A DNA stretch of 64,000 nucleotides from NCBI RefSeq assembly GCF_003918875.1, contig NW_025765225.1, forward strand, positions 1,240,001-1,304,000, in the 5' to 3' direction. The notes under the pieces were generated by a model. The model saw only the letters and a list, made by a program, of their open reading frames with translations, was not told the origin of the DNA and did not search any database. The position numbers and the translations under genes were made by a program. Source of the stretch: Haliotis rubra. Its lineage: Eukaryota. This document shows positions 83 through 47,560 of this stretch, piece after piece (the first letter of the stretch is position 1; every line of letters begins with the position of its first letter).

Positions 83-3000
83 CTATTCATGTGCAATCCT
101 ATTTTCTGATATATAATATATAATAAGTTATTGCGTTTTACAGAGACCCGACTATAGACGAAAGCTAGAAAATAGTTTTTTGTCAACACAACTGGTACTC
201 TATCAAATATCCAATCCAGAAATGAGACAGACACACTGACCTGCTCCAAGTCCATGGCCTGGCTCGGGGACGACACCTTAAACATGATGATTGATGTGTA
301 AGGAAATGTAGAATAAAACCAACAAGTAAAACATGTTTAATAATTATGAACATAAACATCCATTATTAGCAAACTATAATGTTTTGTTATCTTGAAATAT
401 TAATGTTCATGATACATAACACAAAATCCCAGTTTACTCATGTCATTATGGAATATACTTCACGCTAAAATAAATAATGATATTTTACCTGCCCCTATTC
501 CATGTTGGGGCTCAGGTAGTGGCCCCACTCCAAATCCCGGCTCTGGGAGTACACCTATAAACAAATACACATATTACGATGTCTTTATGTTCACGATCAC
601 TGTGATCAAGATATAGTTATGTGCGAAAATATAGTCCTCATTCTCAGCACAAGATAAGATCTCTATTCCTCCAAATGCATGTGATGTCGACGATATGTAT
701 GTGTTTTTCTACTGTCCCTTTTCTTTTGACAGTGAAGGATTGATACCTCTGAGACATTGGCATTTCATTTGTCAGTATTGAGAGGGCCTCTGTTAGTAAT
801 ATTCGAAACTGAATGTATTCACCCTTATAGAAGAAGAAGGGTGGTTTGAGGCTTTTACATATTAATATAGTGAATAATCAAGGTAGTTTCATTACCTGAT
901 CTTATTCCATGTGTGATGTGGATAGCTGGAAACAAATATAAAATGCATACAAATAAAAAACGTGTACACAGTAATATATCATGTTGAGCACAGCATCTGG
1001 TATCTCAAAAGCCAGATCCCATATCTTGCTACAATGTTACCAGTATGTTTGTATTGTGCCGTGTGGCGGTGACTGGTTAACCTGTTCTCACCTGACGTTT
1101 CTGTTCCAGTTCGAGGGTTCCCTACTATGATGCAGACGAGTACTACAGGTGATGTAAAAGACACTGGGTGTATTCCACATTGTATTTTAGTAGGGGATCA
1201 GCTTTAACAAGCAGCTTAATAGTAAAATACCAAAATGCACATTTTTGAAACCATGTAATACATTACAAATTACTCGTGTTGAACACGTAGACCGTTTCAA
1301 TGCATAATGTGGTATATGGAATACGTGTGTAGTCATCAGTGTGATTTCAGAATGCATTGACAGATGTAACCAGCTGTATTCCGAGATCCGACTTTATTTT
1401 CAAAGACAAAGTATTGCACTGTTATCAATGTCATAATGGGTACTAGAGTTTCCCTTGGAAAATCGATTTAGGAAATAGGATTAATTCTCACAGGATTACT
1501 AGATATACGGTAAAACAGGTATGTTTGGAATAGCCTATGCAATGGAGTCGACGACAATATGTTTTACACTATTGAAATAGTATCATAACTATGGAGTTCA
1601 GTTGGTTTGTTTGCTTGTTAGTAAGTTAGTTCTTTAGTTTGCTGTTAATGCACCATTCAGCAATATTCCAGCTACAATATTCCAGCTGGCCTAGTGGTTA
1701 AAGCGTTTGCTCGTCACGCCGAAGACCCGGGTTCGATTCCTCACATGGGTACAACGTGTGAAACCCATTTCTGGTGTCTCCCGCCGTATATTGCTTGAAT
1801 ATTGCTAAAAGCGGCGTAAAACTAACCTAACTCACTCACTCACTCGTAGCTTCAGTTTGTTGTGAACGCCACACAAAGCAACATGAGCATCGATCTTTCC
1901 AATGAGGATTCAATTACAACAAAGTCAGTGAGTCTTATTACAGTCAGTATTGTACTTCCGGGGTCGGGACTTAGAGTGGAACCTATTAGTCGCCTCTAAC
2001 GACAAGCATGGGTTGCTGAAGACCAATTCGAACCCGGATCTTAACGGGGAAGTGTTTTGGGGAAAGGAAGGCATACACAACTGGATACTGTACCTGGTTC
2101 GGGTTTTGGAATCACACCAAATCCAAAAACTGAAAGAGAACAATATTTCTTTGTAAGAATCTGTAAATATGGGACGCTTCTATATGATAACATTTCTTAT
2201 TTGTGTCTGAAAGTATGTATTTGAGTGTCGTTTAATGCCCAAGACAGCAATATTATACAGCCTCGGCTGGACAGACATGGCGTTGATATTATGAACAATG
2301 TCCCGAGACGTAGGTATACAATGAAACACAAGCAACAAGTCACCGAGCGTGACAAACAATCTAAATAATGAAGTAGTATTGTTTGCAAATACCGCACAAA
2401 GATCAGGGGATATCCTTTAACAGGTCACGCCAGAACGACCTTTCATCTGACCGATCACTTACCAAATATAGACAATGACATCTGACAATGACAAGGCATT
2501 CCGAACCACATTTACATGCTGTGCGGCTCATTCTGTCAAACTCATCGTTATTTAGTTCTATTAAATAATCACATGAACGGAAGAAACAGTGCAATACTTA
2601 TAATATCGGCCATCTAGAATTAAGGAATTCTCTTTCCTTCAGATGTTTAAACTGCAGAAACTAGCCTGGAATGGACGTCTCAAGTTAAAACTCGTGCCGT
2701 AAAGCTCGAGAATGATTGCTTATGTCGACTTCATTTCATTAGATCTGTGAGTAACGCTAACCAGCACCAAAATCTAATTTAATGAAATTGGCTTTTAATT
2801 ACTGCTGGTGAATGTTATTTGCAGAAAATATTTTTCAACTTCTAAATCGGAATCTCAGTTTTATCGAACTATCAATAAATAAAGTTTGGAGTCGTGGCCA
2901 TTTCTCCACAAAAAATGTAATCTAAGTGTAGAAATACCACTGTTCGATGAATTACATAGTTTAAAACTAAACAGGCATATACGACGGTAGTAAAATATAG

Positions 3001-3184
3001 AACAGAGCTGTGAATGCCTTCACTAAAATAAATAACAAGTATTCATCGTTATAAGAATTAATATATTCAAGATAGGAGTACATTGTCATACGAAACAATT
3101 TTGTTTGACGAATATATAGTTGAAACACAAATAAGAATATTCACCTGTGGTAAAAGAAAGAATAAGTACTGTAAGTGCCCTCAT
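83..3184 (-). CDS. Orphan 64-aa secreted Pro/Gly/His-rich peptide (PEPG repeats), 5 coding exons: 3145-3184, 896-925, 489-554, 241-276, 83-105
   Basis: Hand-spliced: MRALTVLILSFTTAIHITHG-IRSGVLPEPGFGVGPLPEPQHGIGAGVVPEPGHGLGAENRIAHE*. All introns are GT-AG and phase 1. Internal exons are 30, 66 and 36 nt (multiples of 3), the N-terminus is signal-peptide-like, and TATATA lies ~50 nt upstream of the ATG. The last exon is the least certain; the gene could instead continue beyond the window start. Confidence 0.72.
1687..1845 (+). mobile_element. tRNA-derived SINE family A (5'-truncated), inserted into an oppositely oriented family-B SINE
   Basis: A-box gcctagtggttaaagcg, B-box ggttcgattcc, tail aatattgctaaaagcggcgtaaaac-(actc)n. 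Family-B pieces flank it at ~1600-1686 and ~1880-2048. Confidence 0.85.
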
Positions 3185-3228
3185 GTCAACGGTCCAAGCC
3201 TAATGTTGTAGAGGGTGTATGCAGTAGC

Positions 3229-3238
3229 CCTATATAGA
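3229..3238 (-). promoter_or_regulatory. Candidate TATA box of the PEPG peptide gene
   Basis: cttcTATATAggg on the minus strand ~50 nt upstream of ATG 3184. Confidence 0.5.
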
Positions 3239-3381
3239 AGCTTGTATGTGGAGCTGGTGACACTGTGATATTGATGGCCATATAATGTCCCAGTCACTGT
3301 CGCCCTCTAGGCATTCACGTCACTGTTATTGATGTCTCCGTGTACGTCAACTATGGTATTACACAATGTAGCACTAAGTAA

Positions 3382-4017
3382 GTGTCCATTTTTGACACAT
3401 TGCCATCTGTATTGTCTCAGCTGAGCCTATGAACGCTTCCTTCTGACCCGGGCCACGAAGTCAACACACCTCTTTTTTCGTAAACAATTTATCATCTTTG
3501 CATTTTCTGCAGACTAGATTTACCCCTTCGTTGCAGGAAAAAGAGTTCTGGCTCTGTACGATGTATCGCTGGTCAGGCTGAAAGGACCATATATATTCAT
3601 TATGTATTTGAACTCGCTTACTCAGTGAGAAGTTCTTTGTTATTGGTCTTCAGTAATATAGTCGTATCTCTTATCATCGTTCTAAATTGAGAATGAGTTG
3701 TTTTATATTGTTGTTTGATCAGAGTTACCTCATCTAAATGGGTGTCCATTTTTGACACATTGTCCTCTGTATTGTTTCAGCTGAACCCATGAACGCTTCC
3801 GTGTGACCCGGCAACGAAGTCAACACATAAAACTAACCTTTATGTTTTGGTAAACAATTTGTCATATTAGCATTTCTTGCAGACTAGATTTACTCCTTTG
3901 TTGTAGGAAAGAGAGTTCTGGTTTCGTATGTCCTGCTGGTCAGACTGAACGGAAGGACAATACTCGTCGTCACAATGTACTAGTATCTTTTTATGTATTT
4001 GAACTCTCTTACTCAGT
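3382..4017. repeat. Diverged direct duplication (period ~360 bp) upstream of the peptide gene promoter
   Basis: gtgtccatttttgacacattg...tatgtatttgaactc.cttactcagt occurs at 3382-3626 and again at 3742-4017. Confidence 0.85.
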
Positions 4018-4719
4018 ATAGCTCTTCGTGTTTGTTAATGTCAACACGTGACTTGCCTTTGCGTGTGTTTGTGACAAGTACCGCCATAATGGGGAGGATA
4101 TGGTAACCTTAAACGAATGCTAATGATGGATCTCGTCGTAATCGTACAATGGTCTTCTTGGATATTGTCACCGTTTTAAACGAATACTTTTGATGGATCT
4201 GGTTGGAATCGTACAATGGTCTTCTTTTGGTATTGTTTTCGTTATTATAATTATAGAATGGATTTTGTCGGTTATATTGGCCAACTTTGAGAGCAACATA
4301 TACATGACGTTATAGGCGACTATATTGATCGGGGTCGACGTCATCACGTCGTTGATTGCGTGTCATCAAACCTTAAAGGTGTGGACCGTTGTTCGCAGTA
4401 TCAGTCATTATATTGTCCCATCCAAACATCAACTAGTGCTGGAATATATATGAATAATATTGTCTCCATTAGGCGAAGCAATAACGGGCAAATGTACTAC
4501 AAGAGGGATGAATTCGAATTTACAGTCGTCTGGCTTTGGTGTTTAGATTAACCTTTAATTATACATGCAGGTTTTGCTGAGATAAAAATATTTCTTTTCG
4601 AAAATAATCGTTTACGTTGAATTTGAAAGGCCATATGTGAGTAATTGAAGAGGTTTTAATCTGCTTTCAATACTTTTCCAGCATTGTCACGAAACGCCAG
4701 GACACTCCAACCACTCCAC

Positions 4720-4820
4720 CCCAAAAATAAAACAACAACAACCAAAACCAAAACAAAACAAAAACAAACCCAACAAAACAACAGCAAAAAGAAAAGAAAA
4801 CCAAAAACGCAACATAAAAG
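4720..4820. repeat. A/C-rich low-complexity (AAAAC)n-like tract
   Basis: Seen directly; explains the spurious ORFs at 4667-4905. Confidence 0.8.
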
Positions 4821-5499
4821 ATACCCTGTGACCACAACTCATGGCTTCCTTCCACTTGATCAAAAGTAAAATATATTTACAACAATGGAAGTCAATCATG
4901 TTCATCGATTACATCGTTAAGGCAATACACACATCAGTTTTCACAGACTGTTATTACCTTGCCAGGTATGACAGGTGCTAATTGAGGAGTGTCGGTGACG
5001 CGTTGTACCTTCAAATACCTCTTTAGATCAAAGCCTTGAAACGAAACAGACATCAACGAAGACTACCACGACAGTTGATATGGAATGTAATAACTTATAT
5101 TTGTGGCAGGGGCCTCGGGCTGACCCACTCTACGAGCCAATCATATTTATTCTTTAAACGGATCCTTCTGTCGTCAGTGTCTATAATGATGCCTTGAATA
5201 CGTTATACTTTAGATAAGGAAGGGAAATCAAAGTATGGGTACGTTTTTATGGTAGACACTAGATTATCATTGGAAAATGACGTGGACAAACTGTTACAGT
5301 TACATTATTTGTCGTTAGAGGCTGTATGGTAAATCCTGGGGCCTGGGGCCACCCGTGTCTTCACGTTCTACTGGCTGAGTTCAGTCTCTGTTCTTAAGGT
5401 ATGGTGCATGCGCCAAGTCTTTGTCTTCCGGGTCAGATGGCTGTGTTCAATTTGCCTTCGTAGTCTTGTCCTTGTGTGCACCACTTCTTCTTGTCTATA

Positions 5500-6245
5500 G
5501 CACGTGTTCAGCCAGTGTCTTCCCCATATGGTGCATGTGCCCAATTTGTGTCTTCACTGTGGCGCATCTGTCCAGTTTGTGTCTTCACGGTGCAGTACAT
5601 GTGTCCAGTTTGTGTCTTCACTGTGTGGCGCATGTGTCCAGTTTGTATCTTCATGGTGTGGTGCATGTGCCCAGTTTGTGTCTTCACTGTGTGGTTCATG
5701 TGTCCAGTTTGCGTCTTCACTGTGTGGCGCATGTGTCCAGTTTGTATCTTCATGGTGTGGTGCATGTGCCCAGTTTGTGTCTTCACTGTGTGGTTCATGT
5801 GTCCAGTTTGTGTCTTCACTGTGTGGCGCATGTGTCCAGTTTGTATCTTCATGGTGTGGTGCATGTGCCCAGTTTGTGTCTTCACTGTGTGTGCGCATGT
5901 GTCCAGTTTGCGTCTTAATGATGTGGCGCATGTGTCCAGTTTGTGTCCCCACGGTGTGGCGCATGTGTCCAGTTTGTGTCTTCACGGTGTAGTACATGTC
6001 CAGTTTGTGTCTTCACTGTGTGGCGCATGTGTCCAGTTTGTATCTTCATGGTGTGGCGCATGTGTTCAGTATATGTCTTCACGATGTAGTACATGAATCT
6101 AGTTTGTGTCTTCATGCTGTGGTGCATGTGTCCAGTTTGTGTCTTCACGGTATGTTGCATGTGTCTTGTTTGTATCTTCCTTGTGTGGTGCATGTGCCCA
6201 GTTTGTTTCTTCACGGTGTGGTGCATGTGCCCAGTTTGTTTGTTC
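5500..6245. repeat. 33-bp minisatellite (~22 copies) with a 99-bp higher-order trimer
   Basis: Unit ~ggtgtggtgcatgtgtccagtttgtgtcttcac. The variant catggtgtggtgcatgtgccc recurs at 5652, 5751 and 5850 (99-bp period). Confidence 0.95.
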
Positions 6246-27900: not shown

Positions 27901-30900
27901 TTTATGTGCAGATGGTATTACTAGTGATTTCAGTCAGGATAATTTGGAAAGTCATGTAAATATATATTCAGTCTTAATGCTCCTATTACCCATATGTAAG
28001 TTTGTTTCATATAGATAGGATCGGATTAAACAAATCACCTGGTCCTGATGGCTTACCTGTAGAGTTTCTAAGGAAAACTAAGAATCATATTTCACCTTTA
28101 TTAGTTTTAGTGTTCAGTAAGATATTTGAAAGTGGCAATTTTCCCAAAGAATGGGGTAAGAGTATTATATGTCCTCTGTTTAAGTCTGGGGATAGGCATT
28201 CTCCTGATAATTATCGAGGAATTTCTTTAATCGATGCAGTATGCATAGTGTTTTGCTCCATTCTTAACTATAGGCTTCAGAGGTGGTGTAATGAACATGA
28301 TGTTATTGACGAAGCACAGTTTGGCTCCAGAGCCAATCGTTCAACTATTGATGGCATATTCTGTTTGCACTCTGTTCTCTTTTCAAAGGCCTTTGACTCA
28401 ATTAACTATGATGTATTGCTGAGTACCTTGGAGGCAGTAGGTGTGGGTGGTAATTTTATGAAGATCATAGTATCGATGTATTCTAACCTGACAGCTTGTG
28501 TTGGACTCACAAACGGTTTGTCAAATTATTTTAGTTGTAATATTGGTGCATTTTAAGCCCACAAATGTTTATCATCTTCATAAATAAGCTGATAGACTGT
28601 GTGAAGGAGAGTGGTGGCAGAGGTGTTTATTTATCTCATACTTTTGATAGTATGTTTGTTTTTATGTTTGCCGATGATGTGACATCTATGGCAGATTCAT
28701 GTCTACAGTTACAAAAAGATCTATGCTCTGGAGCTTTTTTGTGACAGTACGGGTATGAAAGTTAATCTGAGTAAGACAAAGGTAATGGTTTTCCGTAATG
28801 GTGGTCCATTGAGGAAATATGAAAGATGTTTTTTCAAGGGAGATCCAATAGATGTCTTTTCGTCATACAAATACCTTGGTCTTGTTTTTACACCCAAACT
28901 CTGCTGGAGTAAGGCACAGGATTCTCTTGCAGCACAGGCAAATAAAGCATTATTGGCTATGTACACTTATTCAAGGAAATTCGGCAGCTTATCATGTAAG
29001 GCCGTGTTTAAGATATTTGATGCTACAGTTGTTCCAATATTGTGTTATGGTTCAGAAGTATGAGGTGTAAATTATTGTAAGAAAATCGAGAGTTTTCTAA
29101 TTAAATTATGGAAATGGATTCTTAAAGTTGGCAGGAATACTACAAATAATATGGTTCTTGGAGAATGTGGAAGAGTCCCACTTCAGTATATCTATACGAC
29201 CAGAGCGGTTAAAGAACAAATACACTTTGTTTTTTTTACTCTTTTAACTACTACATATGAAAGATTTGTGGTTAGACTTATGCGGAACACCAAATTTATT
29301 CTTTAAAAACTTGTGGTTAATTAATACCGAGCGATTAAAAGTTGCCAAAAAGTCGCCTGCTTCACTCTCGCCCGCCAACGAAACCACAGACAGGTTACGT
29401 AACTCTGTCGCCAGAGCTCTGCAGTGACGTCATATGAGGAACGATTTTCAGTTAGTGGTATAGAAAGTGTGTAGCACGCTCATCATTTTGATGATTTCTC
29501 GACATCAACGACGACATGCCGAATCGTTGCTTTGTCGTCAATTGCTCCTAGACCGAAGTGAGTAGTTTTAATGACGGGGTTTCATTTATAGCGATGCCAG
29601 TTAGTGATTTATGTATTTGTACCCCTCTAGAGTATATGTGATCTTTAAGTACTGGACAAAACTATGAGAATGAAAATAGGAATATGAATGAAAATAGGCT
29701 ACCTTTGCAATGCTATAATATGATGTTGTTACAGGATGAAGGTGGAAGAACAAATTGGGTTACACATATCAAAAACATTTTGTTTAGACTTGGCTTTGAA
29801 TTCGCTTGGGTTGCACAAGATGTAGGGCACCTCGATACCTTTAATTCGGCATTTAAGCAAAGCTGTTTGATAATCTCCATCAAAAGTTGGTTTCAGAATT
29901 GGGAGTTTTATCAAAGACACAATACTATAAGCAGTTTAAATCATTATTAACCCATTTATGCATAGGGTCTTAGATTTTCATCACATTTTGTGAGCTGATT
30001 TCTTTTGGCAAGCAATGAAAGGTATGAGGTGTCATTTTACCAGTAAATAAATTTTTCCATTCTTTTTTACACTGCAAAAGTACGCCCCATAAATGGGACA
30101 ATATGCAGATGAGTGAACTTAAATTAGGTAATTTATTAGGCTTAGGTGGGGAAATCAACCTCTTAAATCTTAAAAATTGACTCTTTTCATTTGAAAGCTT
30201 TCATGGAATAAAACTAAAATGGCTTTTATATGAAATGTGTATTAACAAATTGAAACCTGAACATTTCATGGACATTCTTGATTCCATTAAATGTTTTCTG
30301 ATGAACTAAACATCATAGTTGATGAATGTATCCTTAAGTCATCTGCTGTTCCTCACATATGTAAACCATGGGTACAGGGTTATTTTACAATGTTAGGTAG
30401 GTGCATTCATACAGACATCTGGAGGAAGTGAAGGGCCTTGGGTAAGTATTTCTTGATGTGTTATACTAAATCATGTAAATCTTTACTTCTGTTTCTTACA
30501 TAAACCACATTTTATGCTAGTAAGTAGATTATTGGTTTCCAAGTGCCAAACTAATCAATTATTGATCATGCGTTCCATGGTTTTGCAAACGCAGCTAGTT
30601 ATTGAAATTTGTCGATAATTTGAATGATCGGTATGGTCACGTCCAGGTTAAGGAATTGTAAAAATTATAGCATCACGGCATGAAGAAGGAAATTCCACTG
30701 ACGTCCAAATGCTATCAAATATATTTAAAAGGGTTTCTAAACACGATTCTGTAAGTGCTTCGGGAGTTGATACTAAATGTTATCAGTTCCTGCAGCAGTA
30801 TCTTGAGCTTGTTTGAAGCTCATGAATAGAAAACATTTCATTATAATCTTCCCCAGCAGAGGACTTAGGGATACATTCATCAACTATGATGTTTAGTTCA

Positions 30901-33900
30901 TCAGAAAACATTTTATGGGATCAAGAATGCCCATGAAATGTTCAGGTTTCAATTTGTTAAAACACATAGTTTCATATAAAAGCCAGTTTGGTTTTATTCC
31001 ATGAAAGCTTTCAAATGAAAAGAGTCAATTTTAAGATTTAAGAGGTTGATATCCCCCACCTAAGCCTAATAAATTACCTAATTTCAGTTCACTTATGTGC
31101 ATAATGTCCCATTTTTGGGACGGCACTTTAGCGGAAAATTGAGTATGGAAAGAATGGAAACCATTTTCATTTTATTTTTCTATTTGAACAACGAAAGTTT
31201 AAGCACATTATAATGAACTTACATAGTTAAAATAGGGACCAATAAAAAATAATCCTATCTCACACTTCGCCGAATTGACAGGGGACCTGCCTTGCCACTG
31301 CAAGTGGCCATGCTTAAAGAACTTAAACTCTACAAGTGATGTAAATGGTTAAACCACTAAACAATTTACTCAGCTTCATGCACGTCTATACTGCAAGTTT
31401 CTGTATTCAACTATAGGAGAGAAATGCTTCCTAGAAGTACCCGTCCCCAAAAAGGGACGATATGCACCAGTGGGTTAAATGTTGAATTGGTATACTGAAC
31501 CACAAAACAAATGTCGCACCGATAGCGGTTTCTTAAAGCACACACTTTAATTCACTCTAATTAACAATCAAAACCAAGGATTGAGTTCAAATTTGACAAT
31601 TATGGTTAACACATTTTCGGGAATCACATTTAGAGTTCACACAAACAAAATGACCAAAAATGGTACAGTAAAGATACCTCAAAGTCAGTATTGTGTGTGA
31701 TGTAAATCACTTCATGTTTGAGTTCAAACAACGCTGTATAGATATTAATATACAACACTGGAATAGTAAAATAAGAAACTTATCATTTCTTGTAAATTAT
31801 AGTACATTTAAGTCACTCCTTGAACCTGAACTGTATATTTCCTGTGGCGCATTACACAAAGATCTTATGCAAATGTTGATCAAATTCCGATGCCAATCAC
31901 ATAACTTGAATATACAAAAACAACGTTTTTCAAAGATAATTGTCCCATATAAAGAATTAGTTTGTAACATTTGTACTTTAACCGTGCTTGAAGACGAATA
32001 TCACTTGTTGCTAATATGTCCATTTTATAACCGATGCAGATCCCAATGTATTCCAGCCTATTTCTACAGCCCACCTTCAATTGTCAAATTCCGAGCCCTT
32101 ATGAAGATACACAGTGTCACTGTTCTTAAAGGAATATGTATATTCCTGAACCAAAACCTACGTTAAAATAATTGTATTATGAATTATATTTCAACTCTAC
32201 ACACCATGACAATGTTGTATTACCTGTTGTACTCTTGGCCACATGGCCTTCAATTCTGAATAAAGTGATCAAAGTGATCAAAGTATTGTGTGTGGCCTCT
32301 ATGGGCATCGATGAAAGCGTTGCATCGTCTGTACATGGAATGAATTAGCCGGTTTATGAAGGCCATAGGCACTTGTGTCCATACTCTGTGAAATGCCTGA
32401 TCGAGTCCAGCAGCAGTTGTCGGCCTTGGCTGCAGGTCATTCAGTCTTCTTTGAATCTCGTCCCAAAGGTGTTCTATTGGACTCAAATCAAGACTGAGTG
32501 CAGGCTATTGTAGGGTTTGGAGTCCAATGTTACTCTGGCAGTGTGGGCACGATCTTTGTCTTGCTGGAAGATGTGATTTCTGTTAAGGTCCAAAATGTGG
32601 TACAAAGTGGGGTCTTATGACTTGGTCAATATAGCGAGCAGCTGTCACGTCATTTCCTCATCCTGGACCGAGATTCTGGAACACCACGGTGCTAACTATC
32701 TGGTTCAGACCGATTGCACCCCCCCACCATGATGATTGGACCACCCCATGAGTCTTTTTCAACAATACTCTATTGGAAAACAGTTCCCCACGCCTTCACC
32801 ATACTCTCACTCTGCCATCGACTGTCGAAACACAGTATCGGCTTTCAGGAGATAAAAAGCACAGTTCTCCATTGTCGATAACGCAAATTTCAATGCTGAC
32901 TTGCCCATTGCAGTCGGTTTTGGCGATGATGAGCGGTGAGGACAGGACTGCAATATGTGACAGCAGAGGTTTCTCCCACGCAAACGTCGACGCATTGTAT
33001 CGGCATTGATGGGTCTGTTGTGAGTCCCAATGGTCTGGCGTGCTGTTTCCGTCTCTCTGGGGAAGCGATCCTTGAGATGGTGTCGGCCTTGACGTTGTGA
33101 TGTTACTGAAGGTCGCTTACTGCGTGGACGGTCTTGGATGCTGTTAGTGACCTGATACCGCTCCTGCAGTCGGTTGACTGTCCTAACATGAACATTAAAA
33201 TGATTGGCTACCCTCCGTGCAGTCTGCCCAACTTGCAATCGTCGCAAGACTTGGTTCCTCCGATCTCTCGTAAGTCGTGCCATGACGATTGTGTCAAAAC
33301 AAACATGATTTCAGGTGAGTTTGGGACTCGCTTTCATTGGTAGGGTTGTCACTATATGCACGTGCCTTTTCATTTTCACGAATGTCATACGGAACCTTTT
33401 ACCACGTCTGCCAGTTTAGGTGCGTTTGGTCGATATGCTTTTTCATCGGAAAACACACTGATGTTGGTAATAACTGTCAATTTGGATTGAAAAACATGTT
33501 AATAAAACGATACAATCATAATAAAAACACCATTTTGTATGAACAAAATCTTGCATTTGGTTTTGAAAAGCGACGTTTCTTTTGTGGTTCAGTATATTTA
33601 TCATCAGATTTTCCTTTTTGTATTGGGTCTGCCATCGCAAGATTTAGATGTTGTACTTATGGACTAGCAGTAGAAACAGGCCGTTATGATGGTACTAAAT
33701 ATATAAGGCGACTCTGCCCTTTTTTGCCTTAAAGATGTATTATCTTTTGTGGAAGATGAATATCGTGTTCTATTTGCAACCATAAGAAGCCCTTATATTT
33801 TCAAGCATGTAACTTCAGTATCACATCAGTCTTTTATGTATATTATGGCATCAGATAAATGTAGTGTTGTCTATGATATTGGTCAGTTCTTACTTAAGGT

Positions 33901-36900
33901 GTATAAACTTAGAATTGCCCTTACACGTGAAATTGATGTGTGATATGTGTACATATGACAGGTAAATATATATACATGACAGCTCTTGCCTGGAATAGTT
34001 CATGGACTCTATGTTGTGTATTTATGCGCGGATTGTGAAAGTTAATCCAACGCCAAGACTGCATTTTGGGCCAATGGCCTTGATATTGGAATAAAGGTCT
34101 GTCAGTCTATCTGAATCACTAACCACTAGGCCTAGACTTAGTGGGCATTGCATTCTAGAACATTGGCTTTCTAGATATTTTACAATATTCAAAGACCGTG
34201 TGTTGAGGTAATTGTTCATTCTGCTACAATACTTTACTTTCAATATCTAATAAACTCCTCACAACGGAATCATGATATCATGCCCCTTCCCCCCGACACA
34301 CACACACAGACACAGACACTCATACTCACACGCACGCACACACGCACACATATACACACACTGTGTATCTACACAGAGAAATCTGAACGTTATGACTACT
34401 CCGTCCCAGTAGAGACACCAAATACGATGGTCGCCAGCTAACATCGAAGAAGAGCTTGTACTAATCTCGCACTCACCTTGACGAAAAGGTACTCCAAACA
34501 TGTACCAGAAAATATCAGCTCTCTTTAGCGTCCTTGTTGATGCCACTGCATTTTTACAATCCGACAATTCCACAGCACTGACCATAAGAAACACGACGAT
34601 GAAGGCCAGTGTTAAGCACACATACACCTCCCACTTAAAGGGCCAAGTGAACGTCCAGATCTTCCTTGTGTCATCTGCAGACTCTCTGACTATAATGCTC
34701 GTTGTGTCCATCATGAAGGGGAAAGCAAAATCTACAATTTTGTCTCGTTCGTACGTTATGCTTATATCCGTTATTGCCATCTCTACTGCCTGACAAAAAA
34801 CAAACACGTGACAAAAACATAAACTGATGAGTAAATGAGTGAGTGAGTGAGTTTTGTTTTACGCCGCTGTTACCAATGTGGCAGCAATATCACGGCAGGG
34901 GACACCAGAAATGGGCTTCACATATTGTACCAATGTGGGGAATCGAACCCGGGTCTTCGGCGTGACGAGCGAACGCTTTAACCACTAGGCTACCCCACCG
35001 CCCCGACGGGTACATTAAAGGTATTCACTTGAAAATTGGATTTGACCAGAAAACAGCTTACGTCATTACAACTTTTTCTAGGCTGAAAACAGTCGCCGAA
35101 AGGCGACAAACTTACTATGACACCACTAAATGCATCATCATCCAATAACCATTTCTTGTTTGTGGATTTTTGTTCCACCATAAAACTGCTATTAATGTTT
35201 TTTTGTGAACTCAGTCCGTTTGTATTTGAGGGTTTACAAACACCCACATCTGTTCTGATCTGAATTTAATGACATAATTCAAGCTAAGGTGACGATATAT
35301 AAAATAAACTTTCTGATATGTAATACATAAACTTATCCACAAGTGAGAGTCAAATCCAACATGAATTAAAAAGTGCATAATAATGTTGACAACGAACCTT
35401 ATTTTGCAGCTGACCCACAAGTCCTGACCATTTACCATTGCCAATATGTGCTCCGTACTGTTTGTCTTCCGGCTGAACGAATTCGTAACTACAAACATAA
35501 GATGATAGGTTATGGACCTGGATCTCGTACTGGTGTAATGTCCTTTTCGCTGTATATTTACATGTCCATCAGAAATTGTAGGGATTAATGCCTCTGGATC
35601 AGCGTGCGACACTGTTTGTTCCATCTAAAAGACCTGTATTCACAATGGTACTAAGAAACATCGATCTTTGTTATTGATGTCGTCCCCACCAAATATAGTT
35701 CCTTCTGTTGTGTCAATTTGCCAAATATTCTGTTTCTTTCAAATTACTTTATTCTATTGATACGTATTATCATTTATCTACACAATATAACATAATGCTC
35801 GCGTGTACGCCAGTGAATAATCTGTGTGGACTATCCAATGGATTGGATTCCAATCGGCGTTGAAAGGAAAAATAGAACATGATAAGAATGCTGTCCTGTG
35901 CTTTACAAGTAAGCAACGTGTGAATCAGTTTATGGTGTCTCGGTCGGTGTAATACGGAGTAAAATCATATTCACTCCAATCCAAGGCATACTCACGTAAA
36001 GTTCAATCTGTCCCTTACAATGTTGAACAAGTCCACACAGAAACCGGAATAAGTTTGATTGCGGTGAAAAACGAATGGAGGCCACTGAAAGCAATAATTT
36101 ATGTACCATATTTCTGACGAGCGATAAGCCCTGAAAAGTTTACGGAGGTATTGTCAGCATCACACCCGGTTAAGACTCAGACCTGGATCACTTAGGGTTT
36201 TGTCCAACAACATGAAGTTAACACGCCGTCATATGAAACTGTCATAATTTTACAGCTATATTCTCCAAAACAGTGTTTAAACCAAACCCAGTCCATCATT
36301 CAATGTCTAAATCAAGATAAATGTATTACGAATATGGATCAAAGAACTCATAAATATGTCTAATAATTTCAGAGGTTGATACAACGCTTAAGCAATAGCA
36401 AGTTCAACTGTAGGGATAGTTTGAAAGGGAAGAAGAGGCGGTCGAAGAATAGAACCCAGCTATGCTTTGCGTTTCCTATTCTTGTTGTTGCTTACTATAT
36501 AGCTTGCTTTGTACATTTAACTCACCTCAAGAGTCCCCACAAGAAACTTGCGTCCATTGAAGCCTCGTCGACTGTTTGGGTAAAGGTCCTCGTCTACGGA
36601 CTTTTCTTGTTTGGTAATTCTGTGAAAATGGCGTCCTTCCTTACTCCACAGCAATGTGTAATAGATTAACCGTTCCTAGAACAAAGTGCTTTTATACACG
36701 TATGGGCTGACACTGCTTGGTGAGATTATGTTCAGTAATTATCACTGAGAGTTTTTGTGTGTGTGTACGCGCTGTCCGTAGAGCCCCATACTAACGTACG
36801 AACTCAATGATTCAAACAATTTAACACCACGTCATTGGCCCTTTTTTACTTTAAGTCGTGAGAGAGACGTTTCGATACAGATTCTTGTACCGTTCTCAAG

Positions 36901-39900: not shown

Positions 39901-41882
39901 AATGTGGTCGATGCAACCTAATCAGAAAACACTATAAAGTAGCCCTAAGAATTCTTAACTTTGATCGTAGCCAATGTGTTAAGAATGGGCTTAAGAAGTG
40001 CGTAGGGCTGCGAACGTTTCGAGAATAGCTAACCTGGTATAAGTAACTGTATAAGGAATGTTAAGCTATATATGCATATTAAATTAATAAAGAAAATCAG
40101 CATTGCCTTTCCTTTTGGGCAGAGTACATTACGTGTGAGCATAAAGTATAATTCAATTTCTACACAGACTGATACATACCTGGGAACATGAATTTTGTGT
40201 AGATGACGTGATGACAATTGCTGCAACGTTGTCGAGTACGACATCCAGAACGGGTAGAGGTTTAGGCTGACGTACGGTTATAAGCCATCTTGAAGCATGG
40301 CGCAACATGGAGTCCACGTGATTATCCTGGGAGTACCTACTAGCCTTAAGAAGAGAGTTCATAACCGGTTAATAGCTCAAACTAGTTCAAAACGTTATCT
40401 ATTTTCAATAACGTTAAATCGAACGATTACATCTCTTTTAACATGCACCATCCGTCAACATTGTAGTTTGATAAGTAAAACAGCTATGTTTGATTCTGGA
40501 ATAAAGTAAATGACAAATACATAAGGAGGGACCGTGTGGTCCGTTGTGGGATATCGCTCGTTCCTAACGCTATCAAGCATTTATTTTCTATAATAACGGA
40601 AATATGTTTTCACCTGTGACATGATACGTGCCAAACACGTGGCCGAACACATGATCAAGGTTGTGTCTTCCCCAGAAAAGCTGCTGAAATCAATTGAAAT
40701 GTTGCTTGTGTACGTATGAATACGCATTTGAATCCCTGCCGACGACAGTTTGACTGACAGCCACGACGCCGAGGCCTCTGCAAGTGAAAGCGACAAACTT
40801 CTTTCAATAATTACAGAAATATGATTGTACGACTGAACTATATCGTAAGCAAGCCTTTATGGATCACTATCACATTGTGATGACGCCAGGTGAACGTATT
40901 CTTCCGTTCCGAGGGCAATCGTCCCAAACACATGCAAAGGCAAATCCACACGAAAAGAATACGGCAATATATGGTACAAGTCTTAATACGTTTAAGAATA
41001 ATAATGCACTCGTCGTGGGCATAAAATGATTGTTATGATACTCTTGATCTATCCAGATTTATACCATATTGAAACATTAAGTCTAAACATGATGATGACA
41101 TTATCTGGACAGTGGAACATCATGTCAACCGTATTGCAAACAACATTATACAATCATCTAGTTGATAAATCCCATAAAACTACATTACCTTCACTTGAGT
41201 CATGAATAATAGTTACAGTATTCCACCTGAGGGTTGCTACCAGCCTGAGAATGGTGCCTAAAGCCTTCGCCGTGCCCGGGGTACGGGGATCGCTATATGT
41301 GTAATGACCAAACAGGGCATCTCTTGCTTTGTCTCCCTTGGTAAATGTCCAGTTTGTGTGGACATTGTCATCACCTATACAAGGCTGAGATGTATAGCAA
41401 CCAGTTCCATCAAAACCACAGTTGATACTGTTATCAGGTACACAAAGTTGAGTTGTACAACACACAATTCCATTACAATCACCGTTCATGTTGTCATCAA
41501 CTAAAAACAGTTGAGTTGTACAGCAATCAGTTACATTGCAACCACCGTTGATGTTGTCATCAACTATACAAGGCTGAGCTGTACAGCAGACACTTCCATT
41601 GCAACCACCGTTGATGTTGTCATCAACTATACAAGGCTGAGCTGTACAACAGACACTTCCATTACAGACATCGTTGATGTTGTCATCAACTATACAAAGT
41701 TGAGTTATACAGCAGACTGTTCCATCATAACCACTGTTGACTTCGCCATCAACTTTATAACGTTTAACAATAACTCGATCCGTGCCACCAACAAATAAGC
41801 CATCGGAGGAATAAAATGACCAAATCAAAAGGAAATATTTTACAACTGACAACAGCGATGGGATATTTTGCGATATTGACAT
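24991..41882 (-). CDS. Divergent ionotropic receptor (IR / iGluR-family ligand-gated channel), ~782 aa; exons 41189-41882, 40614-40777, 40180-40344, 36526-36675, 35996-36084, 35398-35488, 34477-34789, 26327-26544, 25394-25659, 24991-25189
   Basis: S1 motifs WPPFV, YSGFCVDL, WSGLVGQL, ITYER..VDF; M1 after WPFKWEV; pore FWYMFG..FRQG; M3 SFCCNLIAFLT; S2 YSFAFPNGSPY, TGVIERL...WW; M4. All GT-AG and phases consistent (2349 nt). Exons 1-3 are less certain than exons 4-10. Confidence 0.88.
29213..29644. mobile_element. Kolobok-like non-autonomous DNA element with TTAA TSD
   Basis: TTAA at 29209-29212 and 29645-29648; imperfect TIR agaacaaatacact / agtatatgtgatct; removal restores the LINE reading RAVKYWTKL; THAP-like start MPNRCFVVNC at ~29516. 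Confidence 0.75.
29951..31474. mobile_element. piggyBac-like non-autonomous element (TTAA TSD, CCC...GGG ends) with a ~265-bp internal inverted repeat
   Basis: ttaa|cccatttatgcat ... atgcaccagtggg|ttaa; removal restores LINE FKSLLNVE; ~30083-30347 is inverted at ~30854-31122. Confidence 0.8.
31493..33594 (-). mobile_element. Tc1-like transposon (decayed transposase starting at 33283), TA TSD
   Basis: TIRs tactgaaccacaaaa.aaa.gtcgc / gcgacgtttcttttgtggttcagta; HTH start MARLTRDRRNQ...; SPIEHLWDE and GHTQY* C-terminus; frameshifted. Confidence 0.92.
31700..32281 (+). mobile_element. 5'-truncated LINE with 13-bp TSD inserted at the end of the Tc1 transposase
   Basis: KFRCQSHNL, CNIC..EDEYHLLLICP; tail aataaagtgatcaaagtgatc; TSD agtattgtgtgtg at 31687-31699 and 32282-32294. 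Confidence 0.88.
34290..34362. repeat. Imperfect (CA)n microsatellite
   Basis: Seen directly. Confidence 0.9.
34835..35004 (-). mobile_element. SINE family A, full length
   Basis: ggggcggtggggtagcctagtggttaaagcg head; (actc)n tail. Confidence 0.9.
36902..37069. other. Assembly gap (N run) in IR intron 3
   Basis: Run of Ns. Confidence 1.
39040..39700 (-). mobile_element. Highly decayed Tc1-like transposase relic
   Basis: Minus-strand WFSGESR (FSDES-like, ~39340-39358) and LLQDNASPH (~39078-39104) motifs. Confidence 0.6.
41364..41753 (-). repeat. Coding 63-bp tandem repeat (6 copies) encoding VDDNINGGCNGSVCCTAQPCI-like units in IR exon 1
   Basis: Seen directly in DNA and in the ORF 41154..41882 translation. 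Confidence 0.92.
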
Positions 41883-43772: not shown

Positions 43773-44731
43773 CTCTTGTGTTGCCACTTGTTGAGATATA
43801 CTGAGGGAAACAAAAAAGGGAAGACTACTTTATGGCAGTGTTCCTTTATTTATTCTCGGATTTCCTCCAGTAGCGCTATACACAGCTGGTGATGAAAACT
43901 GGAAAATATTATAGAAACGCTTGAATTTTCCCGTGTTCCTTTGTTTGTTTCTCTCGGAAATAAAAATGTTGTATAAGATAAATATCAACTTCGCGTGTGA
44001 AATACCATTAGGATACTCACGAATAGCTAGCATCATTGTTAAGCGTTACTGATTCATAATACTAATGATACAAGATTAGTCGAAATCGTACAACAAAGTC
44101 GGTTTTTGTCAGGTATTTCTAATGAATTATAAATTGTATGTCTTTATTTCCTTGCTATGTAAGGCACATCAGTTTTTAAGCTGATTCCTTTAGCGTTAAA
44201 CATACGTGCAAATGACGGGATTGGGGATTTAGTGCAAGATATCAACATACGTGTATATATAGTCAACGAGAACACTTCTGAAGTTAAACGCCCATTACTC
44301 TGTGAATTGTCACTCTATTTTACGGGAAATCGAGTGTATAGCAAACAATACTTTAACGCATAATGGCCTTGTTTATACAGTTTTATCGACCGTAACTAGT
44401 CCCGAGGCTTAATCCTCAGATAATCCGTGACCATCGGTAAATTCAGGGTAACTCGCGCACCTCGGCACATTTGAAGCCTTCATTGGGTGATTAATATCAG
44501 AGGAATCCTGAATAGGCTGCTATCACAACACCGGCTAGACAGACAGTTACAATTTTACACCAAGCCAGTCAGGGTGTACAGTAAAGTGCTACCTTTGTAC
44601 ACTATCCTTTTCCCATTTAGCTTACGCTGAGTATGTTTTTCTTTCAGTGAATAGATTTATCTCCGAAGCCTTTAATACCTCTTCCACGTGAGCTTCTAAA
44701 GCGAGTGGATATGTAAACACGTTGATTTCAC

Positions 44732-44739
44732 TATAAATA
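44732..44739 (+). promoter_or_regulatory. TATA box of the 141-aa orphan gene
   Basis: cTATAAATAc ~95 nt upstream of ATG 44826. Confidence 0.6.
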
Positions 44740-44825
44740 CGGACCTCTTTTCATTCTGGGTAACACTGAGAACCAGACACTGAAGGTAGAACATCCTAAG
44801 GATATCGCACAACGTTGTCTACTAT

Positions 44826-45704
44826 ATGGACATGAGACAATCCCGTAACATACGTAGTCGACGAAGACTTGTTGTAAGTTATGCACAATTTTCTCATATT
44901 AACTGTTGATCACTATTCATAATATACATGCATGATTAACATGCTCTCGTATATACTCGAAACCTTGGCATTCTCGATGGATATATATGTTATGGATGGA
45001 ATGATATCAACTGAGTCTAGGATTTTGATGACAGTTCCTCCCTCATTGTCTTTCTATTGACTTTAAACATGAATATAAACATGAAGCCACAGATACTATT
45101 GAACTTTGAGTTTACTATAAATACACACTAAATTTGGATGAAATGTATGTAACTGATAATTCTAAAAAACTTTCAGTATACCACGGCTTCGTCACCAGTC
45201 ACGGGGATATCAAGACTCACTCTCCATAGTCCATGTCACGTCACGTCATCTCATGACAGTCCACGTCCACTCAGTGACAACCCAACCTTCTCTGACAATG
45301 ACGTACTACATGACAGTGGCTTTGAATCATGTGACAGCAGCGAAGAGGTAAGCGTTCAGTAGAATACATGTATACAGTGTTTCAAAAAGAAAGGAATATG
45401 GATAGTGTCTTGTTTTGGTGGTTCAAACTCAAAATTAATTACTGTAGATTTACATAATGTATACGAGCATTTGTTAATAATACTTATTTTTTTTCAGTTG
45501 ACACCTGACAGCAGACCCGGTGGCTGCATTCATTCAGACACAAGTCTGTCCAGTGTCAAAAGAAGTCTATTTACAAAGAAACGATCACACGACGATGTCA
45601 AGGGATATCCAAGCACTAAGAAATCAAGGCTCGGAAACAGTGATGCTCAAGTGACATGTGACGTTAATCTTTATATTCCGGGCGCCTTAATGGACATCGA
45701 CTGA
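44826..45704 (+). CDS. Orphan 141-aa Ser-rich, probably disordered protein with cyclin-docking, beta-TrCP-degron and NLS motifs; exons 44826-44873, 45177-45347, 45498-45704
   Basis: Donors GTAAGT and GTAAGC, acceptors tttcag and tttttttttcag, all phase 0 and stop-free: MDMRQSRNIRSRRRLV/YTTASSPVTGISRLTLHSPCHVTSSHDSPRPLSDNPTFSDNDVLHDSGFESCDSSEE/LTPDSRPGGCIHSDTSLSSVKRSLFTKKRSHDDVKGYPSTKKSRLGNSDAQVTCDVNLYIPGALMDID*. TATA upstream; AATAAA at ~46718. Confidence 0.8.
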
Positions 45705-47396
45705 TGTCATGGCGATGTACGTCTTCATGCCTTCAAACATCTTTGTTGACCCATATCTGTATCCCTCTCCGACCACCCCAAGGAAATGATATCACAAGAG
45801 TCACCGTGTAATGGACCCAAAAAAGTCCAACGATAATAGTCGAGAGAAAGACACTTGTCATATTTCGTCATGTTGGCAAAGGATATATATTTATTGAAAT
45901 GTGTTCAGTGCTGATTTGTGATACAGTGCCACTGTAATTCAATTCAACAGGCATCTTGAAGGATTTGTTTTCCAGTGAAGTGTGGCGTTGATGATGATGC
46001 ACAGTGGAAACCCGTTCATACCAATTAACGAATAACGTCATTTCTCTTTCCCATCGGTAATCCCCTAGAAGGCGGGGTTTGTGGAGCAATAGCGTCCTGA
46101 CTAACGAAGTTTGGCGCCAGGAAACAAACACGTACTTATTGTTATGCAAACTAACTGTGCTGCAGGCGCTACTGGTAAAACATATGCTCAGACTCACTTT
46201 TTTGGGCAAATTTGTAAAACTGTACCCTTAATGAGCCTTTTACGCTCAAAGAGTCTGTCTTTCTGGCGTTATCTCTTTGATATTCACCCCCAAAGCGAAC
46301 GGATAAAACATTTTCAAGTTCGTACCAGAGGGCTAGTGTATCACCTCTCCTATAAAGACCCAAGTTGACTTTTTGTGCAGAGTGATCATAATAATATCAT
46401 ATCATATCATATATAATTAACGGCCGTGTTACATTTTTCAAGTCTTCGTCACTTTGTGGTAGAGGACAGTACAATGGATTTGTGTGTGTTGGTTGTCAAA
46501 CTTGTTTTGACCCGCTGTGTTAAGGTCAATAAGCCGTTCTGAGCTTGTGAAGTTGTTATTTTACTTGTGGTATTCTTGTATGTTTTAGTAATTAAATGAA
46601 TATCACCATTGTTATTCATGTATGTACTCATGTGTATGATAATCTATATTTATCGAAATAGCTAGCGTCTCAGAACGGGGCAATCACAACGGCCATGTAA
46701 TGGGCGTGCATTGGTGTAATAAATGTTTCATAAACGTACAATACTTTTATGTAGTTTTCCACTATTCATTCATTTTCCTACAATTTTCAAACGACCATCG
46801 GTTTTCTTTCAAAATCTACAAAACTGAATTGAACTGAACTTGACTTGAAATGATCCGAAGCCATATTTCTTCAACATGAGAGACAGATACATGGGGTACA
46901 TTTTGGTACATTATGGCATTGAGAAACATTTTCACCTGCAGCTTTTATAAGAAAAACAACAACACCAAAATCCTCCCTGTGAGGTTTGTTTAATCAAAGT
47001 ACTCATTTAATTTTTTTTTGTCTCGGATACGAAAATAAATTTAGCCTCGGGGTATTTCTGCATTTCATAAATTCTGTTTTCCGATCCGGCACCTGCCATC
47101 GTTTTTCAAAACAAAAAAACTGCGTAAGCGTTACATAAGAGGTAAAACTTCGAGTACTTGCCGAACCCAATGTGTACGGTACCCAACTGACAACGTCTAC
47201 ACATGCTTTGGATCAGTTTCCATGATCAGTGGTGTGTGTATCGATGAATGATGTTTTTCGCCACTCCCAATAATAACGTTTGCGTGGACCACGCAAATAT
47301 GTTGTTGATCTTACGAGCAATGTTTCTGACGCATCTGCCACCTTGTAAACGGATATTCTGGTCATGGCATGTCGGCATGAATGCGTTCCACTATTG

Positions 47397-47560
47397 GGGT
47401 CGATGGGGTAGCCTAGTGGTTACAGCGTTCGCTCGTCACGCCGAAGATCCGGGTTTGATTCCTCATATGGATACAATATATGAAACCCATTTCTGGTGTC
47501 CCCCGTCGTGATATTGTTGGAATATTGCTATCAGCGGCGTAAAACCATACGCACTCACTG
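47397..47560 (+). mobile_element. SINE family A, diverged copy
   Basis: ggggtagcctagtggttacagcgttcgctcgtcacgccgaaga...gcggcgtaaaac. Confidence 0.88.

What the first reader, a model, noticed from the sequence alone, without database searches (positions are those of the whole stretch)
44826..45704. Orphan mini-protein resembling a Cdc25 regulatory N-terminus without the phosphatase: candidate new cell-cycle regulator
Seen: a clean 3-exon, TATA-driven gene for a 141-aa Ser-rich protein. It carries, in order, RRRLVY (RxL cyclin-docking type), SSPVT plus further SP/TP sites, a perfect DSGFES phosphodegron consensus (45312-45329), a second RxL motif KRSLF, a bipartite-NLS-like KKR-x10-KKSR and a C-terminal MDID. 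Established: DSGxxS is bound by SCF-beta-TrCP, and RxL motifs dock cyclin A/E. Human Cdc25A begins with RRRLLF...SPVT...DSGF in this same order, but then has a rhodanese catalytic domain, which is absent here. Inference: an unstable nuclear cyclin-CDK inhibitor or decoy, or a beta-TrCP titrator, either derived from Cdc25 or convergent. Best candidate for an undescribed system in this window.
Basis: partly seen in the sequence, partly recalled or inferred. Interest (0 to 1): 0.8.

Follow-up and report, generated by a model that had tools for sequence, protein, structure and literature searches.

The report
Cdc25 regulatory half, phosphatase lost
This small abalone gene is not an orphan: it is the first three exons of a duplicated Cdc25 cell-cycle phosphatase gene, keeping Cdc25's docking and degradation motifs but no enzyme part, and it looks kept by selection, though nobody has yet shown that it is expressed.

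Summary

The gene is not an orphan. The genome is very probably Haliotis rubra, and it holds at least 20 copies of a compact 7-exon Cdc25-like gene. The mini-protein aligns collinearly with their N-terminal regulatory region (Smith-Waterman 133, z = 17, 0 of 2000 shuffles). All three exons and both intron positions correspond.

No catalytic exon lies in the window or on its contig. No remnant follows the stop codon.

Signs of selection:
- The reading frame is open at about 42% identity, while a less diverged family pseudogene is full of stops.
- 14 of 20 family-invariant residues are kept, against 22 of 67 at variable columns (p = 0.004).
- Against a roughly 3-4% diverged relative, exons differ at 4 of 426 bases and introns at 19 of 453 (p = 0.0025). 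The exon changes are 3 synonymous and 1 non-synonymous.

No RNA evidence could be obtained. No orthologue is annotated among 1.84 billion protein representatives.

Best reading: a retained, catalytic-domain-less Cdc25 paralogue, probably a decoy for cyclin-CDK and/or beta-TrCP. The binding is inferred, not shown.

The scan separately noted a CDC25 duplication elsewhere in this genome (s1-352204).

The parts
44732..44739 (+). TATAAATA box, about 94 nt before the ATG
   Evidence: The block 44729-44860 shows no difference from the diverged relative. About 5.5 differences are expected at the intron rate.
44826..44873 (+). Exon 1 coding part, MDMRQSRNIRSRRRLV. It supplies the only usable start codon and the first RxL motif (RRRLV|Y).
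   Evidence: It corresponds to the family's 7-codon exon 1: MSRKQLK|F in H. rufescens and MPRRQLM|F in L014. The phase-0 intron sits just before the aromatic residue in each case. The single difference from the relative is synonymous (44861).
44874..45176 (+). Intron 1 (303 nt, gt..ag)
   Evidence: It shows 12 substitutions and a 12-nt indel against the relative.
45177..45347 (+). Exon 2, with SSPVT, three SP sites and an acidic run. It is homologous to the second exon of the Cdc25-like genes.
   Evidence: 45% identity to L005:1480-1662. Both end with the same phase-0 donor straight after S..E. Against the relative there is 1 synonymous change (45272) and an in-frame 9-nt deletion at 45283.
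45312..45329 (+). DSGFES, a beta-TrCP-type phosphodegron motif
   Evidence: D-S-G-x-E-S is invariant across the family alignment A2. The family's D-S immediately before it is V-L in the mini-protein.
45348..45497 (+). Intron 2 (150 nt, gt..ag)
   Evidence: It shows 7 substitutions and a 6-nt indel against the relative.
45498..45704 (+). Exon 3 coding part including the TGA stop. It is homologous to the first ~55 codons of the family's third exon. Homology ends at LYI, eight codons before the stop.
   Evidence: 40% identity to L005:2076-2255, with the acceptor at the same place. No remnant of MKSAVDKME..LIGDGS follows in any frame. No listed difference from the relative between 45519 and 45733.
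45558..45629 (+). KRSLF (second RxL) followed by the bipartite-NLS-like KKRSHDD...KKSR
   Evidence: L, F, K and R in xxSLFxxKR are invariant in the family.

Best explanation
The gene is a truncated paralogue of the abalone Cdc25-like ('M-phase inducer phosphatase-like') genes. It consists of their exons 1-3, the disordered regulatory N-terminus, and ends in a stop codon instead of running on into the four catalytic rhodanese exons.

It keeps the family's short linear motifs:
- an N-terminal RxL,
- S/T-P sites,
- the DSGFES degron,
- a second RxL next to a basic nuclear-localisation stretch.

It has been kept open and conserved. The most likely reading is a small nuclear protein that competes with full-length Cdc25-like phosphatases, or with other substrates, for the cyclin docking groove and/or SCF-beta-TrCP. 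That would tune CDK activation or Cdc25 turnover.

Shown: origin, exon structure, motif retention, signs of purifying selection. Inferred: expression, nuclear location, instability, binding partners, direction of the effect.
For: Homology:
- The best genome-wide matches of exon 2 and of exon 3 both fall in the same Cdc25-like genes, in order, just upstream of ...IIDCRYPYEYEGG.
- Smith-Waterman score is 133, z = 17.4, and 0 of 2000 composition-preserving shuffles reach it.

Exon structure:
- Exon boundaries coincide with the family's.
- Exon 1 and its intron position match the annotated H. rufescens gene.

Family:
- 20 catalytic-exon copies at E <= 2e-15 lie on five contigs. None lies on the window's contig.
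- Named relatives in Haliotis cracherodii, H. rufescens and H. asinina carry rhodanese domains.

Constraint:
- 141 codons are open at about 42% identity. A family pseudogene at 49-76% identity carries 2-4 stops per exon.
- 14 of 20 family-invariant residues are kept, against 22 of 67 at variable columns, p = 0.004.
- Against the diverged relative, exons show 4/426 differences and introns 19/453, p = 0.0025.
- The exon changes are 3 synonymous and 1 non-synonymous, with 96 synonymous and 327 non-synonymous sites.
- The promoter and exon 1 block is unchanged.

Other:
- Both flanks are single copy, so this is not a transposon or a recent segmental copy.
- CDC25A's RxL motif at residues 11-15 (RRLLF) recruits cyclins (PMC11316097).
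Against: - No transcript evidence. Every run that held the locus was DNA, and the few RNA-like runs of the relative held none of its words.
- No protein resembling exon 3 is annotated anywhere. This includes the annotated Haliotis protein sets that supplied the family hits, among 1.84 billion representatives and in the word search. The profile would have detected about 70-80% identity.
- The selection test rests on few substitutions and on a difference table that was cut. The 5' flank is also slow, at about 1.5%. At that rate the deficit of non-synonymous changes is only p = 0.04.
- Two family-invariant residues just before the degron are lost, so the degron may not work as it does in the parents.
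- Binding to cyclin or beta-TrCP was not tested.
Confidence: 0.55

Rival explanations
1. It is a non-functional relic: a partial duplicate of a Cdc25-like gene that lost its catalytic exons. It is silent or meaninglessly transcribed and has not yet decayed.
For: - The family turns over fast and leaves debris. One copy is stop-ridden (C2129:1147011-1148167). Another has its third exon fused to the last exon (L015, minus strand, 1824-2441).
- There is no RNA evidence and no annotated orthologue.
- The upstream flank is conserved about as well, so low divergence may be partly regional.
Against: - At about 58% amino-acid divergence a neutral copy should carry several stops, as the less diverged pseudogene does. 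This one has none in 141 codons, four intact splice sites and a start codon.
- Conservation is concentrated on the family's invariant residues.
- Exons are about 4.5-fold less diverged than their own introns, with 3 synonymous and 1 non-synonymous change.
Confidence: 0.3
2. It is the 5' part of a complete Cdc25-like gene. The catalytic exons would lie further away or be reached by alternative splicing, so the real product would be a phosphatase.
For: In the parent genes the third exon runs on and splices to the catalytic exons. A GT follows 12 nt after the stop.
Against: - The in-frame TGA precedes any such donor and is unchanged in the relative.
- There is no CX5R or IIDCR motif and no match to the catalytic exons anywhere in the 64-kb window.
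- None of the 46 catalytic-exon matches in the genome lies on contig C335.
- Independent contigs are collinear for 1.7 kb beyond the stop.
Confidence: 0.04
3. It is a functional, expressed Cdc25-derived protein, but not a competitor. It could be a regulated CDK substrate or adaptor with a new role, or the locus could act mainly as RNA.
For: The constraint evidence is the same as for the best explanation. The last eight residues (PGALMDID) and the exon-1 extension have no family counterpart. The residues before the degron have changed.
Against: The residues that are kept are exactly the parental docking and degron motifs. That makes competition for the same partners the simplest expectation.
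Confidence: 0.1
4. It is an unrelated or de novo orphan whose Cdc25-like motifs arose by convergence or chance.
For: Pfam finds nothing in the exons. The motifs are short.
Against: There is collinear similarity over 112 residues at z = 17.4. Intron positions are identical. The best genome-wide hits of two separate exons fall in the same gene.
Confidence: 0.01

Closest known systems
Abalone 'M-phase inducer phosphatase-like' proteins (XP_071089164.1 H. cracherodii, XP_046358408.2 H. rufescens, XP_067656509.1 H. asinina) and their copies in this genome (C2129, C1024, C2735, C358, C2210)
   Same: The first three exons and both intron positions are the same. Shared motifs, in order, are RxL at the exon 1/2 junction, DSGFES followed by S..E at the end of exon 2, an S/T-P at the start of exon 3, xxSLFxxKR and a basic cluster.
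   Different: The mini-gene stops eight codons after LYI. It lacks the MKSAVDKME..LIGDGS linker and all four rhodanese exons with HCEFSSERxP. Identity is only about 42%. Exon 1 is 16 codons instead of 7. The D-S before the degron is lost.
Human CDC25A N-terminal regulatory region
   Same: The order of motifs is the same: RxL near the N-terminus (RRLLF at residues 11-15, PMC11316097), an SPVT-type site, a DSGF degron and a later basic KRSH-type stretch. The last three are from my own knowledge of the human sequence and of SCF-beta-TrCP targeting, not tested here.
   Different: There is no catalytic domain. Pfam PF06617, which models the Cdc25 N-terminus, gave no match to the exons. Direct sequence similarity to the human protein was not measured.
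Small cyclin-groove binders such as Drosophila Fruhstart (Z600) and the Cy motifs of p21/p27 (from my own knowledge)
   Same: The proposed mode of action is the same: a short disordered protein that occupies the cyclin hydrophobic patch through an RxL-type motif and competes with substrates.
   Different: There is no homology, and no CDI domain was found by Pfam. The mini-protein derives from a CDK activator, not from an inhibitor family.
Mya arenaria hypothetical proteins WAQ98455.1 (840 aa) and WAQ94206.1 (247 aa)
   Same: These gene models consist only of Cdc25-type N-terminal modules without a rhodanese domain (MSIRTRLFEDSPVSDVTS..., ESLDSGIGSS, VKRSLFSGKRP...).
   Different: They are multi-repeat models with 11 and 3 repeats, possibly an annotation or assembly effect of tandem exon copies. 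They come from a bivalve and are not orthologous to the abalone mini-gene.
microProteins and truncated dominant-negative paralogues, such as Id proteins (from my own knowledge)
   Same: The concept is the same: a small protein born by truncating a larger one, keeping the interaction part and lacking the effector part.
   Different: Here the retained part is a set of short linear motifs in a disordered region, not a folded dimerisation domain.

Membership tests
Cdc25 / M-phase inducer phosphatase (as an enzyme) | Rhodanese-fold catalytic domain with the HCX5R active-site loop | tested here: not met
   No HC(E/Q)(F/Y)S..R or IIDCR motif occurs in any frame of the window. tblastn with the 331-aa Cdc25-like protein finds only exons 2-3. 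No catalytic-exon hit lies on contig C335.
Cdc25-like gene family of abalone (as a paralogue by descent) | Significant collinear similarity to the N-terminal regulatory region | tested here: met
   Smith-Waterman 133, z = 17.4, 0 of 2000 shuffles. There are two collinear exon hits in each of two loci.
Cdc25-like gene family of abalone (as a paralogue by descent) | Shared intron positions and phases | tested here: met
   Intron 1 lies between L-x and the aromatic residue of the RxL motif. Intron 2 lies after S..E and before x(S/T)P. All are phase 0.
Cdc25 N-terminal region, Pfam PF06617 (M-inducer_phosp) | Match to the Pfam model | tested here: not met
   No Pfam hit to exon 2 or exon 3 at E <= 10. 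Across the whole genome the model reaches only 21 bits, at the probable canonical Cdc25 on C2511, so it is insensitive to the abalone N-termini.
Cip/Kip CDK inhibitors | CDI domain | tested here: not met
   No Pfam family matches the exons.
SCF-beta-TrCP substrates or pseudosubstrates | DSGxxS motif that is phosphorylated and bound by beta-TrCP | tested here: inconclusive
   The motif is present and invariant in the family. Phosphorylation and binding are not testable here. The family's Ser three residues before the degron Ser is lost.
RxL (Cy) motif cyclin-docking proteins | RxL followed by a hydrophobic residue that binds the cyclin hydrophobic patch | not testable with these tools
   RRRLVY and KRSLF are present, and KRSLF aligns with the family-invariant LF. 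No complex prediction was run, because the cyclin and the spliced mini-protein have no usable reference.
Processed pseudogene (retrocopy) | Lack of the parental introns | tested here: not met
   Both parental introns are present at the parental positions.
Decayed pseudogene | Stops, frameshifts or broken splice sites | tested here: not met
   There are none in 141 codons, and the splice sites are GT..AG. A family pseudogene has 2-4 stops per exon for contrast. Silence of the locus cannot be excluded.

The most novel reading that the evidence does not exclude
Abalone have evolved, by truncating a duplicated Cdc25 gene, a selected 'regulatory-half-only' Cdc25. It would be a 141-aa disordered protein made only of cyclin-docking, CDK-site, degron and NLS motifs. 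It would act as an endogenous competitive regulator of CDK activation or of Cdc25 turnover, a kind of cell-cycle regulator not described before.
Probability: 0.3. Interest if true: 0.7.

Novelty: new variant of a known kind. Interest (0 to 1): 0.5.

Why it matters
Cdc25 phosphatases are controlled through short motifs in their disordered N-termini. A natural gene that keeps only those motifs would be an evolutionary experiment in motif-level competition. It would show whether the regulatory half alone can tune CDK activation or Cdc25 stability.

It sits in a lineage with an unusual expansion of at least 20 Cdc25-like genes, apparently undescribed in the literature I could search. That expansion itself asks why abalone need so many.

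If the gene is silent, it is still a clean example of how partial duplication creates motif-only open reading frames.

Tried and rejected
- Pfam on exons 2 and 3 and on the 99-aa open frame gave nothing.
- The word search with the exon-3 open frame (candidates of 54-173 aa) found no candidate.
- RNA evidence could not be obtained. Both run searches returned only DNA-like holders. The reads call showed contigs running straight through the introns, so splice junctions could not be checked.
- I looked for catalytic remnants after the stop and across the whole window. There are none.
- A DNA alignment of the sequence after LYI against the parental exon showed no convincing similarity. I therefore do not claim that the stop arose inside a still-recognisable parental exon.
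- A transposon insertion as the cause of truncation is not supported, because both flanks are single copy.
- In the probable canonical Cdc25 locus (C2511, 40 kb scanned) simple scans found no RxL, DSG or xxSLF counterpart. The link to the canonical gene's N-terminus is therefore open.
- Literature searches on abalone or mollusc Cdc25 expansion and on catalytic-domain-less Cdc25 found nothing relevant.
- Steps left out: an exact-sequence look-up of the spliced 141-aa product, its structure prediction, and a complex prediction with cyclin or beta-TrCP. A spliced product has no reference, and long sequences may not be typed.

Full report
**What is there**

- The exons are 44826-44873, 45177-45347 and 45498-45704 on the + strand.
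- Both introns are phase 0, with gtaagt/gtaagc donors and pyrimidine-rich ag acceptors.
- The product is 141 aa and Ser/Asp-rich.
- TATAAATA lies at 44732, and 44826 is the first ATG downstream of it.

All listed motifs are present: RRRLVY (across the exon 1/2 junction), SSPVT, four S/T-P sites, DSGFES (45312-45329), KRSLF, KKR...KKSR and C-terminal MDID.

DSGxxS occurs only once in the six frames of the whole window.

Exons 2 and 3 offer no start codon, so the model needs exon 1.

**Whose genome**

The assembly has 1,378,282,171 bases in 2,855 contigs. The published Haliotis rubra assembly has 1,378,265,264 bp in 2,854 scaffolds (PMC6774278). The nearest named proteins are from Haliotis species. 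The window is therefore very probably from blacklip abalone.

**It is not an orphan**

Each exon searched alone against the genome gave only weak hits (E 0.5 and 1.7). The best hit of exon 3 (C1024) and the best hit of exon 2 (C2129) turned out to be two about 94% identical copies of one gene.

tblastn of the spliced protein finds, in each locus, an exon-2-like and then an exon-3-like reading frame in the right order. In C2129 these are followed about 220 nt later by RLTTITGRHKDL...YQIIDCRYPYEYEGG, the start of a Cdc25 catalytic domain.

I rebuilt that gene:
- two N-terminal exons of 61 and 80 codons;
- four catalytic exons carrying HCEFSSERAP;
- 331 aa in total.

A local alignment of the mini-protein with its first 141 residues scores 133. 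Shuffles of the mini-protein average 32.7 with SD 5.8 and a maximum of 63 in 2000 trials, so z = 17.4. The alignment covers mini residues 22-133.

**Exon structure is shared**

- The family's second exon ends ...DSRDSGFESxxSDSE|gt, and the mini's exon 2 ends ...HDSGFESCDSSEE|gt.
- The family's third exon begins xSPxx... about ten residues before the (R/K)(K/R)(S/A)LF motif. The mini's exon 3 begins LTPDS... at the same distance.
- The annotated H. rufescens gene starts with a 7-codon exon, ATG..MSRKQLK|gtaaga, followed by F.
- The orthologous copy in this genome has MPRRQLM|gtaaga followed by F.
- The mini-gene has ...RRRLV|gtaagt followed by Y.

So the N-terminal RxL motif is split by a phase-0 intron at the same place in all of them. 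The mini-gene therefore equals exons 1-3 of a 7-exon Cdc25-like gene, copied as DNA and not as a retrocopy.

**The family**

The first catalytic exon has 20 copies at E <= 2e-15 on five contigs: C2129, C1024, C2735, C358 and C2210. The probable canonical Cdc25 on C2511 is a more distant match. None lies on the window's contig.

The N-terminal exons show matching copy numbers.

H. rufescens and H. asinina also carry tandem arrays.

**What is missing**

- Homology stops at LYI (residue 133), eight codons before the TGA.
- The family's following MKSAVDKME..LIGDGS linker has no remnant in any frame after the stop. Scores there do not exceed those of shuffled DNA.
- No catalytic exon is detectable in the 64 kb.
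- The kilobase on each side is single copy.
- Independent contigs of the same species and of a relative confirm the assembly and the stop.

**Relic or maintained gene**

Four observations favour maintenance.

1. The frame is open over 141 codons at about 42% identity to the nearest paralogue. A family pseudogene on C2129 that is less diverged (49-76% identity) already has 2-4 stops per exon.
2. The mini-protein keeps 14 of the 20 residues that are invariant among the full-length paralogues. At variable columns it matches its closest paralogue at only 22 of 67 (Fisher p = 0.004). The kept residues are:
   - the degron, its trailing S..E and three further residues of exon 2 (a Pro and two Asp);
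   - the Pro of the S/T-P at the start of exon 3;
   - L, F, K and R of xxSLFxxKR.
3. Contigs of a related taxon (coded organism A) were compared with the window.
   - Exons differ at 4 of 426 bases and the two introns at 19 of 453 (p = 0.0025).
   - The four exon changes are three synonymous (44861, 45272, 45518) and one non-synonymous (45511, Ser to Asn), over 96 synonymous and 327 non-synonymous sites.
   - The only exon indel is 9 nt, in frame.
   - No difference is listed between 45519 and 45733.
4. The TATA box, 5' UTR and most of exon 1 (44729-44860) are unchanged, where about 5.5 changes are expected at the intron rate.

Caveats on point 3:
- The difference table was cut. I checked it against per-contig totals, and one or two differences may be missing.
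- The 5' flank is also slow, at about 1.5%.
- With that lower rate the deficit of non-synonymous changes is only p = 0.04.

**Evidence against function**

- No run on record as RNA holds the locus, and the junctions could not be tested.
- A profile of the exon-3-type region with the mini-protein as first row was searched against 1.84 billion representatives. It found only four proteins: three Haliotis Cdc25-like phosphatases and two Mya arenaria hypothetical proteins, counting one cluster member.
- A local test shows the profile would detect a mini-like sequence down to about 70-80% identity.
- No orthologue is therefore annotated in the public protein sets searched. These include the Haliotis proteins that gave the family hits. 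The gene may be young, tissue-restricted, called non-coding, or silent.

**Mechanism**

CDC25A's N-terminal RxL (RRLLF, residues 11-15) recruits cyclins (PMC11316097). DSG-type degrons target Cdc25A to SCF-beta-TrCP (established knowledge, not tested here).

A protein that keeps just these motifs plus a basic nuclear signal, and has no phosphatase, would most simply compete for the same partners. It could occupy cyclin docking grooves, dampening the Cdc25-CDK feedback or other RxL substrates. It could also soak up beta-TrCP and stabilise Cdc25-like proteins.

One difference may matter. The family-invariant D-S just before the degron is V-L in the mini-protein. It may lack a priming site and be handled differently from its parents.

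All of this paragraph is inference.

**Verdict**

- Origin from Cdc25 is close to certain.
- A maintained coding gene is more likely than not (about 0.6-0.65 across the functional readings).
- The decoy mechanism is plausible but untested.
- It is a new variant of a known kind, not a categorically new system.

I took no step that needed referral. The spliced 141-aa product could not be given to the look-up, folding or complex tools, because it has no reference.

Noticed in passing
G000 contigs C2129:1038-1148 kb, C1024:1580-1605 kb, C2735:4-126 kb, C358:268-282 kb, C2210:965-975 kb: There is a large expansion of compact (~2 kb, 7-exon, ~330 aa) Cdc25-like genes in tandem and inverted arrays. 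At least 20 catalytic-exon copies are present. Similar arrays occur in H. rufescens (L023) and H. asinina (L024). I found no paper describing this.
   Followed up: partly
L015 (G000:C2210:970001-978000), minus strand, 1824-2441: A deletion derivative of a Cdc25-like gene. Its second exon is followed by a third exon that runs directly into sequence of the last exon, so the catalytic exons are skipped. This is a second kind of catalytic-domain-less copy.
   Followed up: no
G000:C2129:1147011-1148167: A decayed Cdc25-like pseudogene at the edge of the array, with 2-4 TGA/TAG stops per N-terminal exon at 49-76% identity. I used it as an internal control for neutral decay.
   Followed up: partly
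P0001 (WAQ98455.1) and P0004 (WAQ94206.1), Mya arenaria: These hypothetical proteins consist only of repeated Cdc25-type N-terminal modules (11 and 3 repeats; RTRLFEDSPVSDVTS, DSGIGSS, VKRSLFSGKRP) and have no rhodanese domain. They could reflect tandem exon amplification or an annotation or assembly artefact.
   Followed up: no
G000:C2757:5-55 kb and C2293:805-843 kb: Long tandem arrays with a period of roughly 2.7-5.8 kb of a reading frame 59% identical to the second half of the first Cdc25 catalytic exon. They may be another amplified rhodanese-containing unit.
   Followed up: no
window 47395-47500: A very high-copy repeat. Summed contig depth is in the millions in all four runs, with many loose ends, which suggests the edge of a SINE-like or tRNA-related element.
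   Followed up: no
L008 (G000:C2129:1103000-1112999), about 2500-6200: A ~3.7-kb minisatellite of ~57-nt units, open in all three frames (YYYFFVSLQTS...), lies directly downstream of a Cdc25-like gene.
   Followed up: no
window 34259-34807 (-), 41154-41882 (-), 28002-28556 (+), 32807-33283 (-): Neighbours of the mini-gene. An ionotropic glutamate receptor gene lies on the minus strand (Lig_chan-Glu_bd hit). Its 5' end is about 3 kb from the mini-gene's TATA box, in divergent orientation. There are also reverse-transcriptase and HTH transposase fragments.
   Followed up: partly
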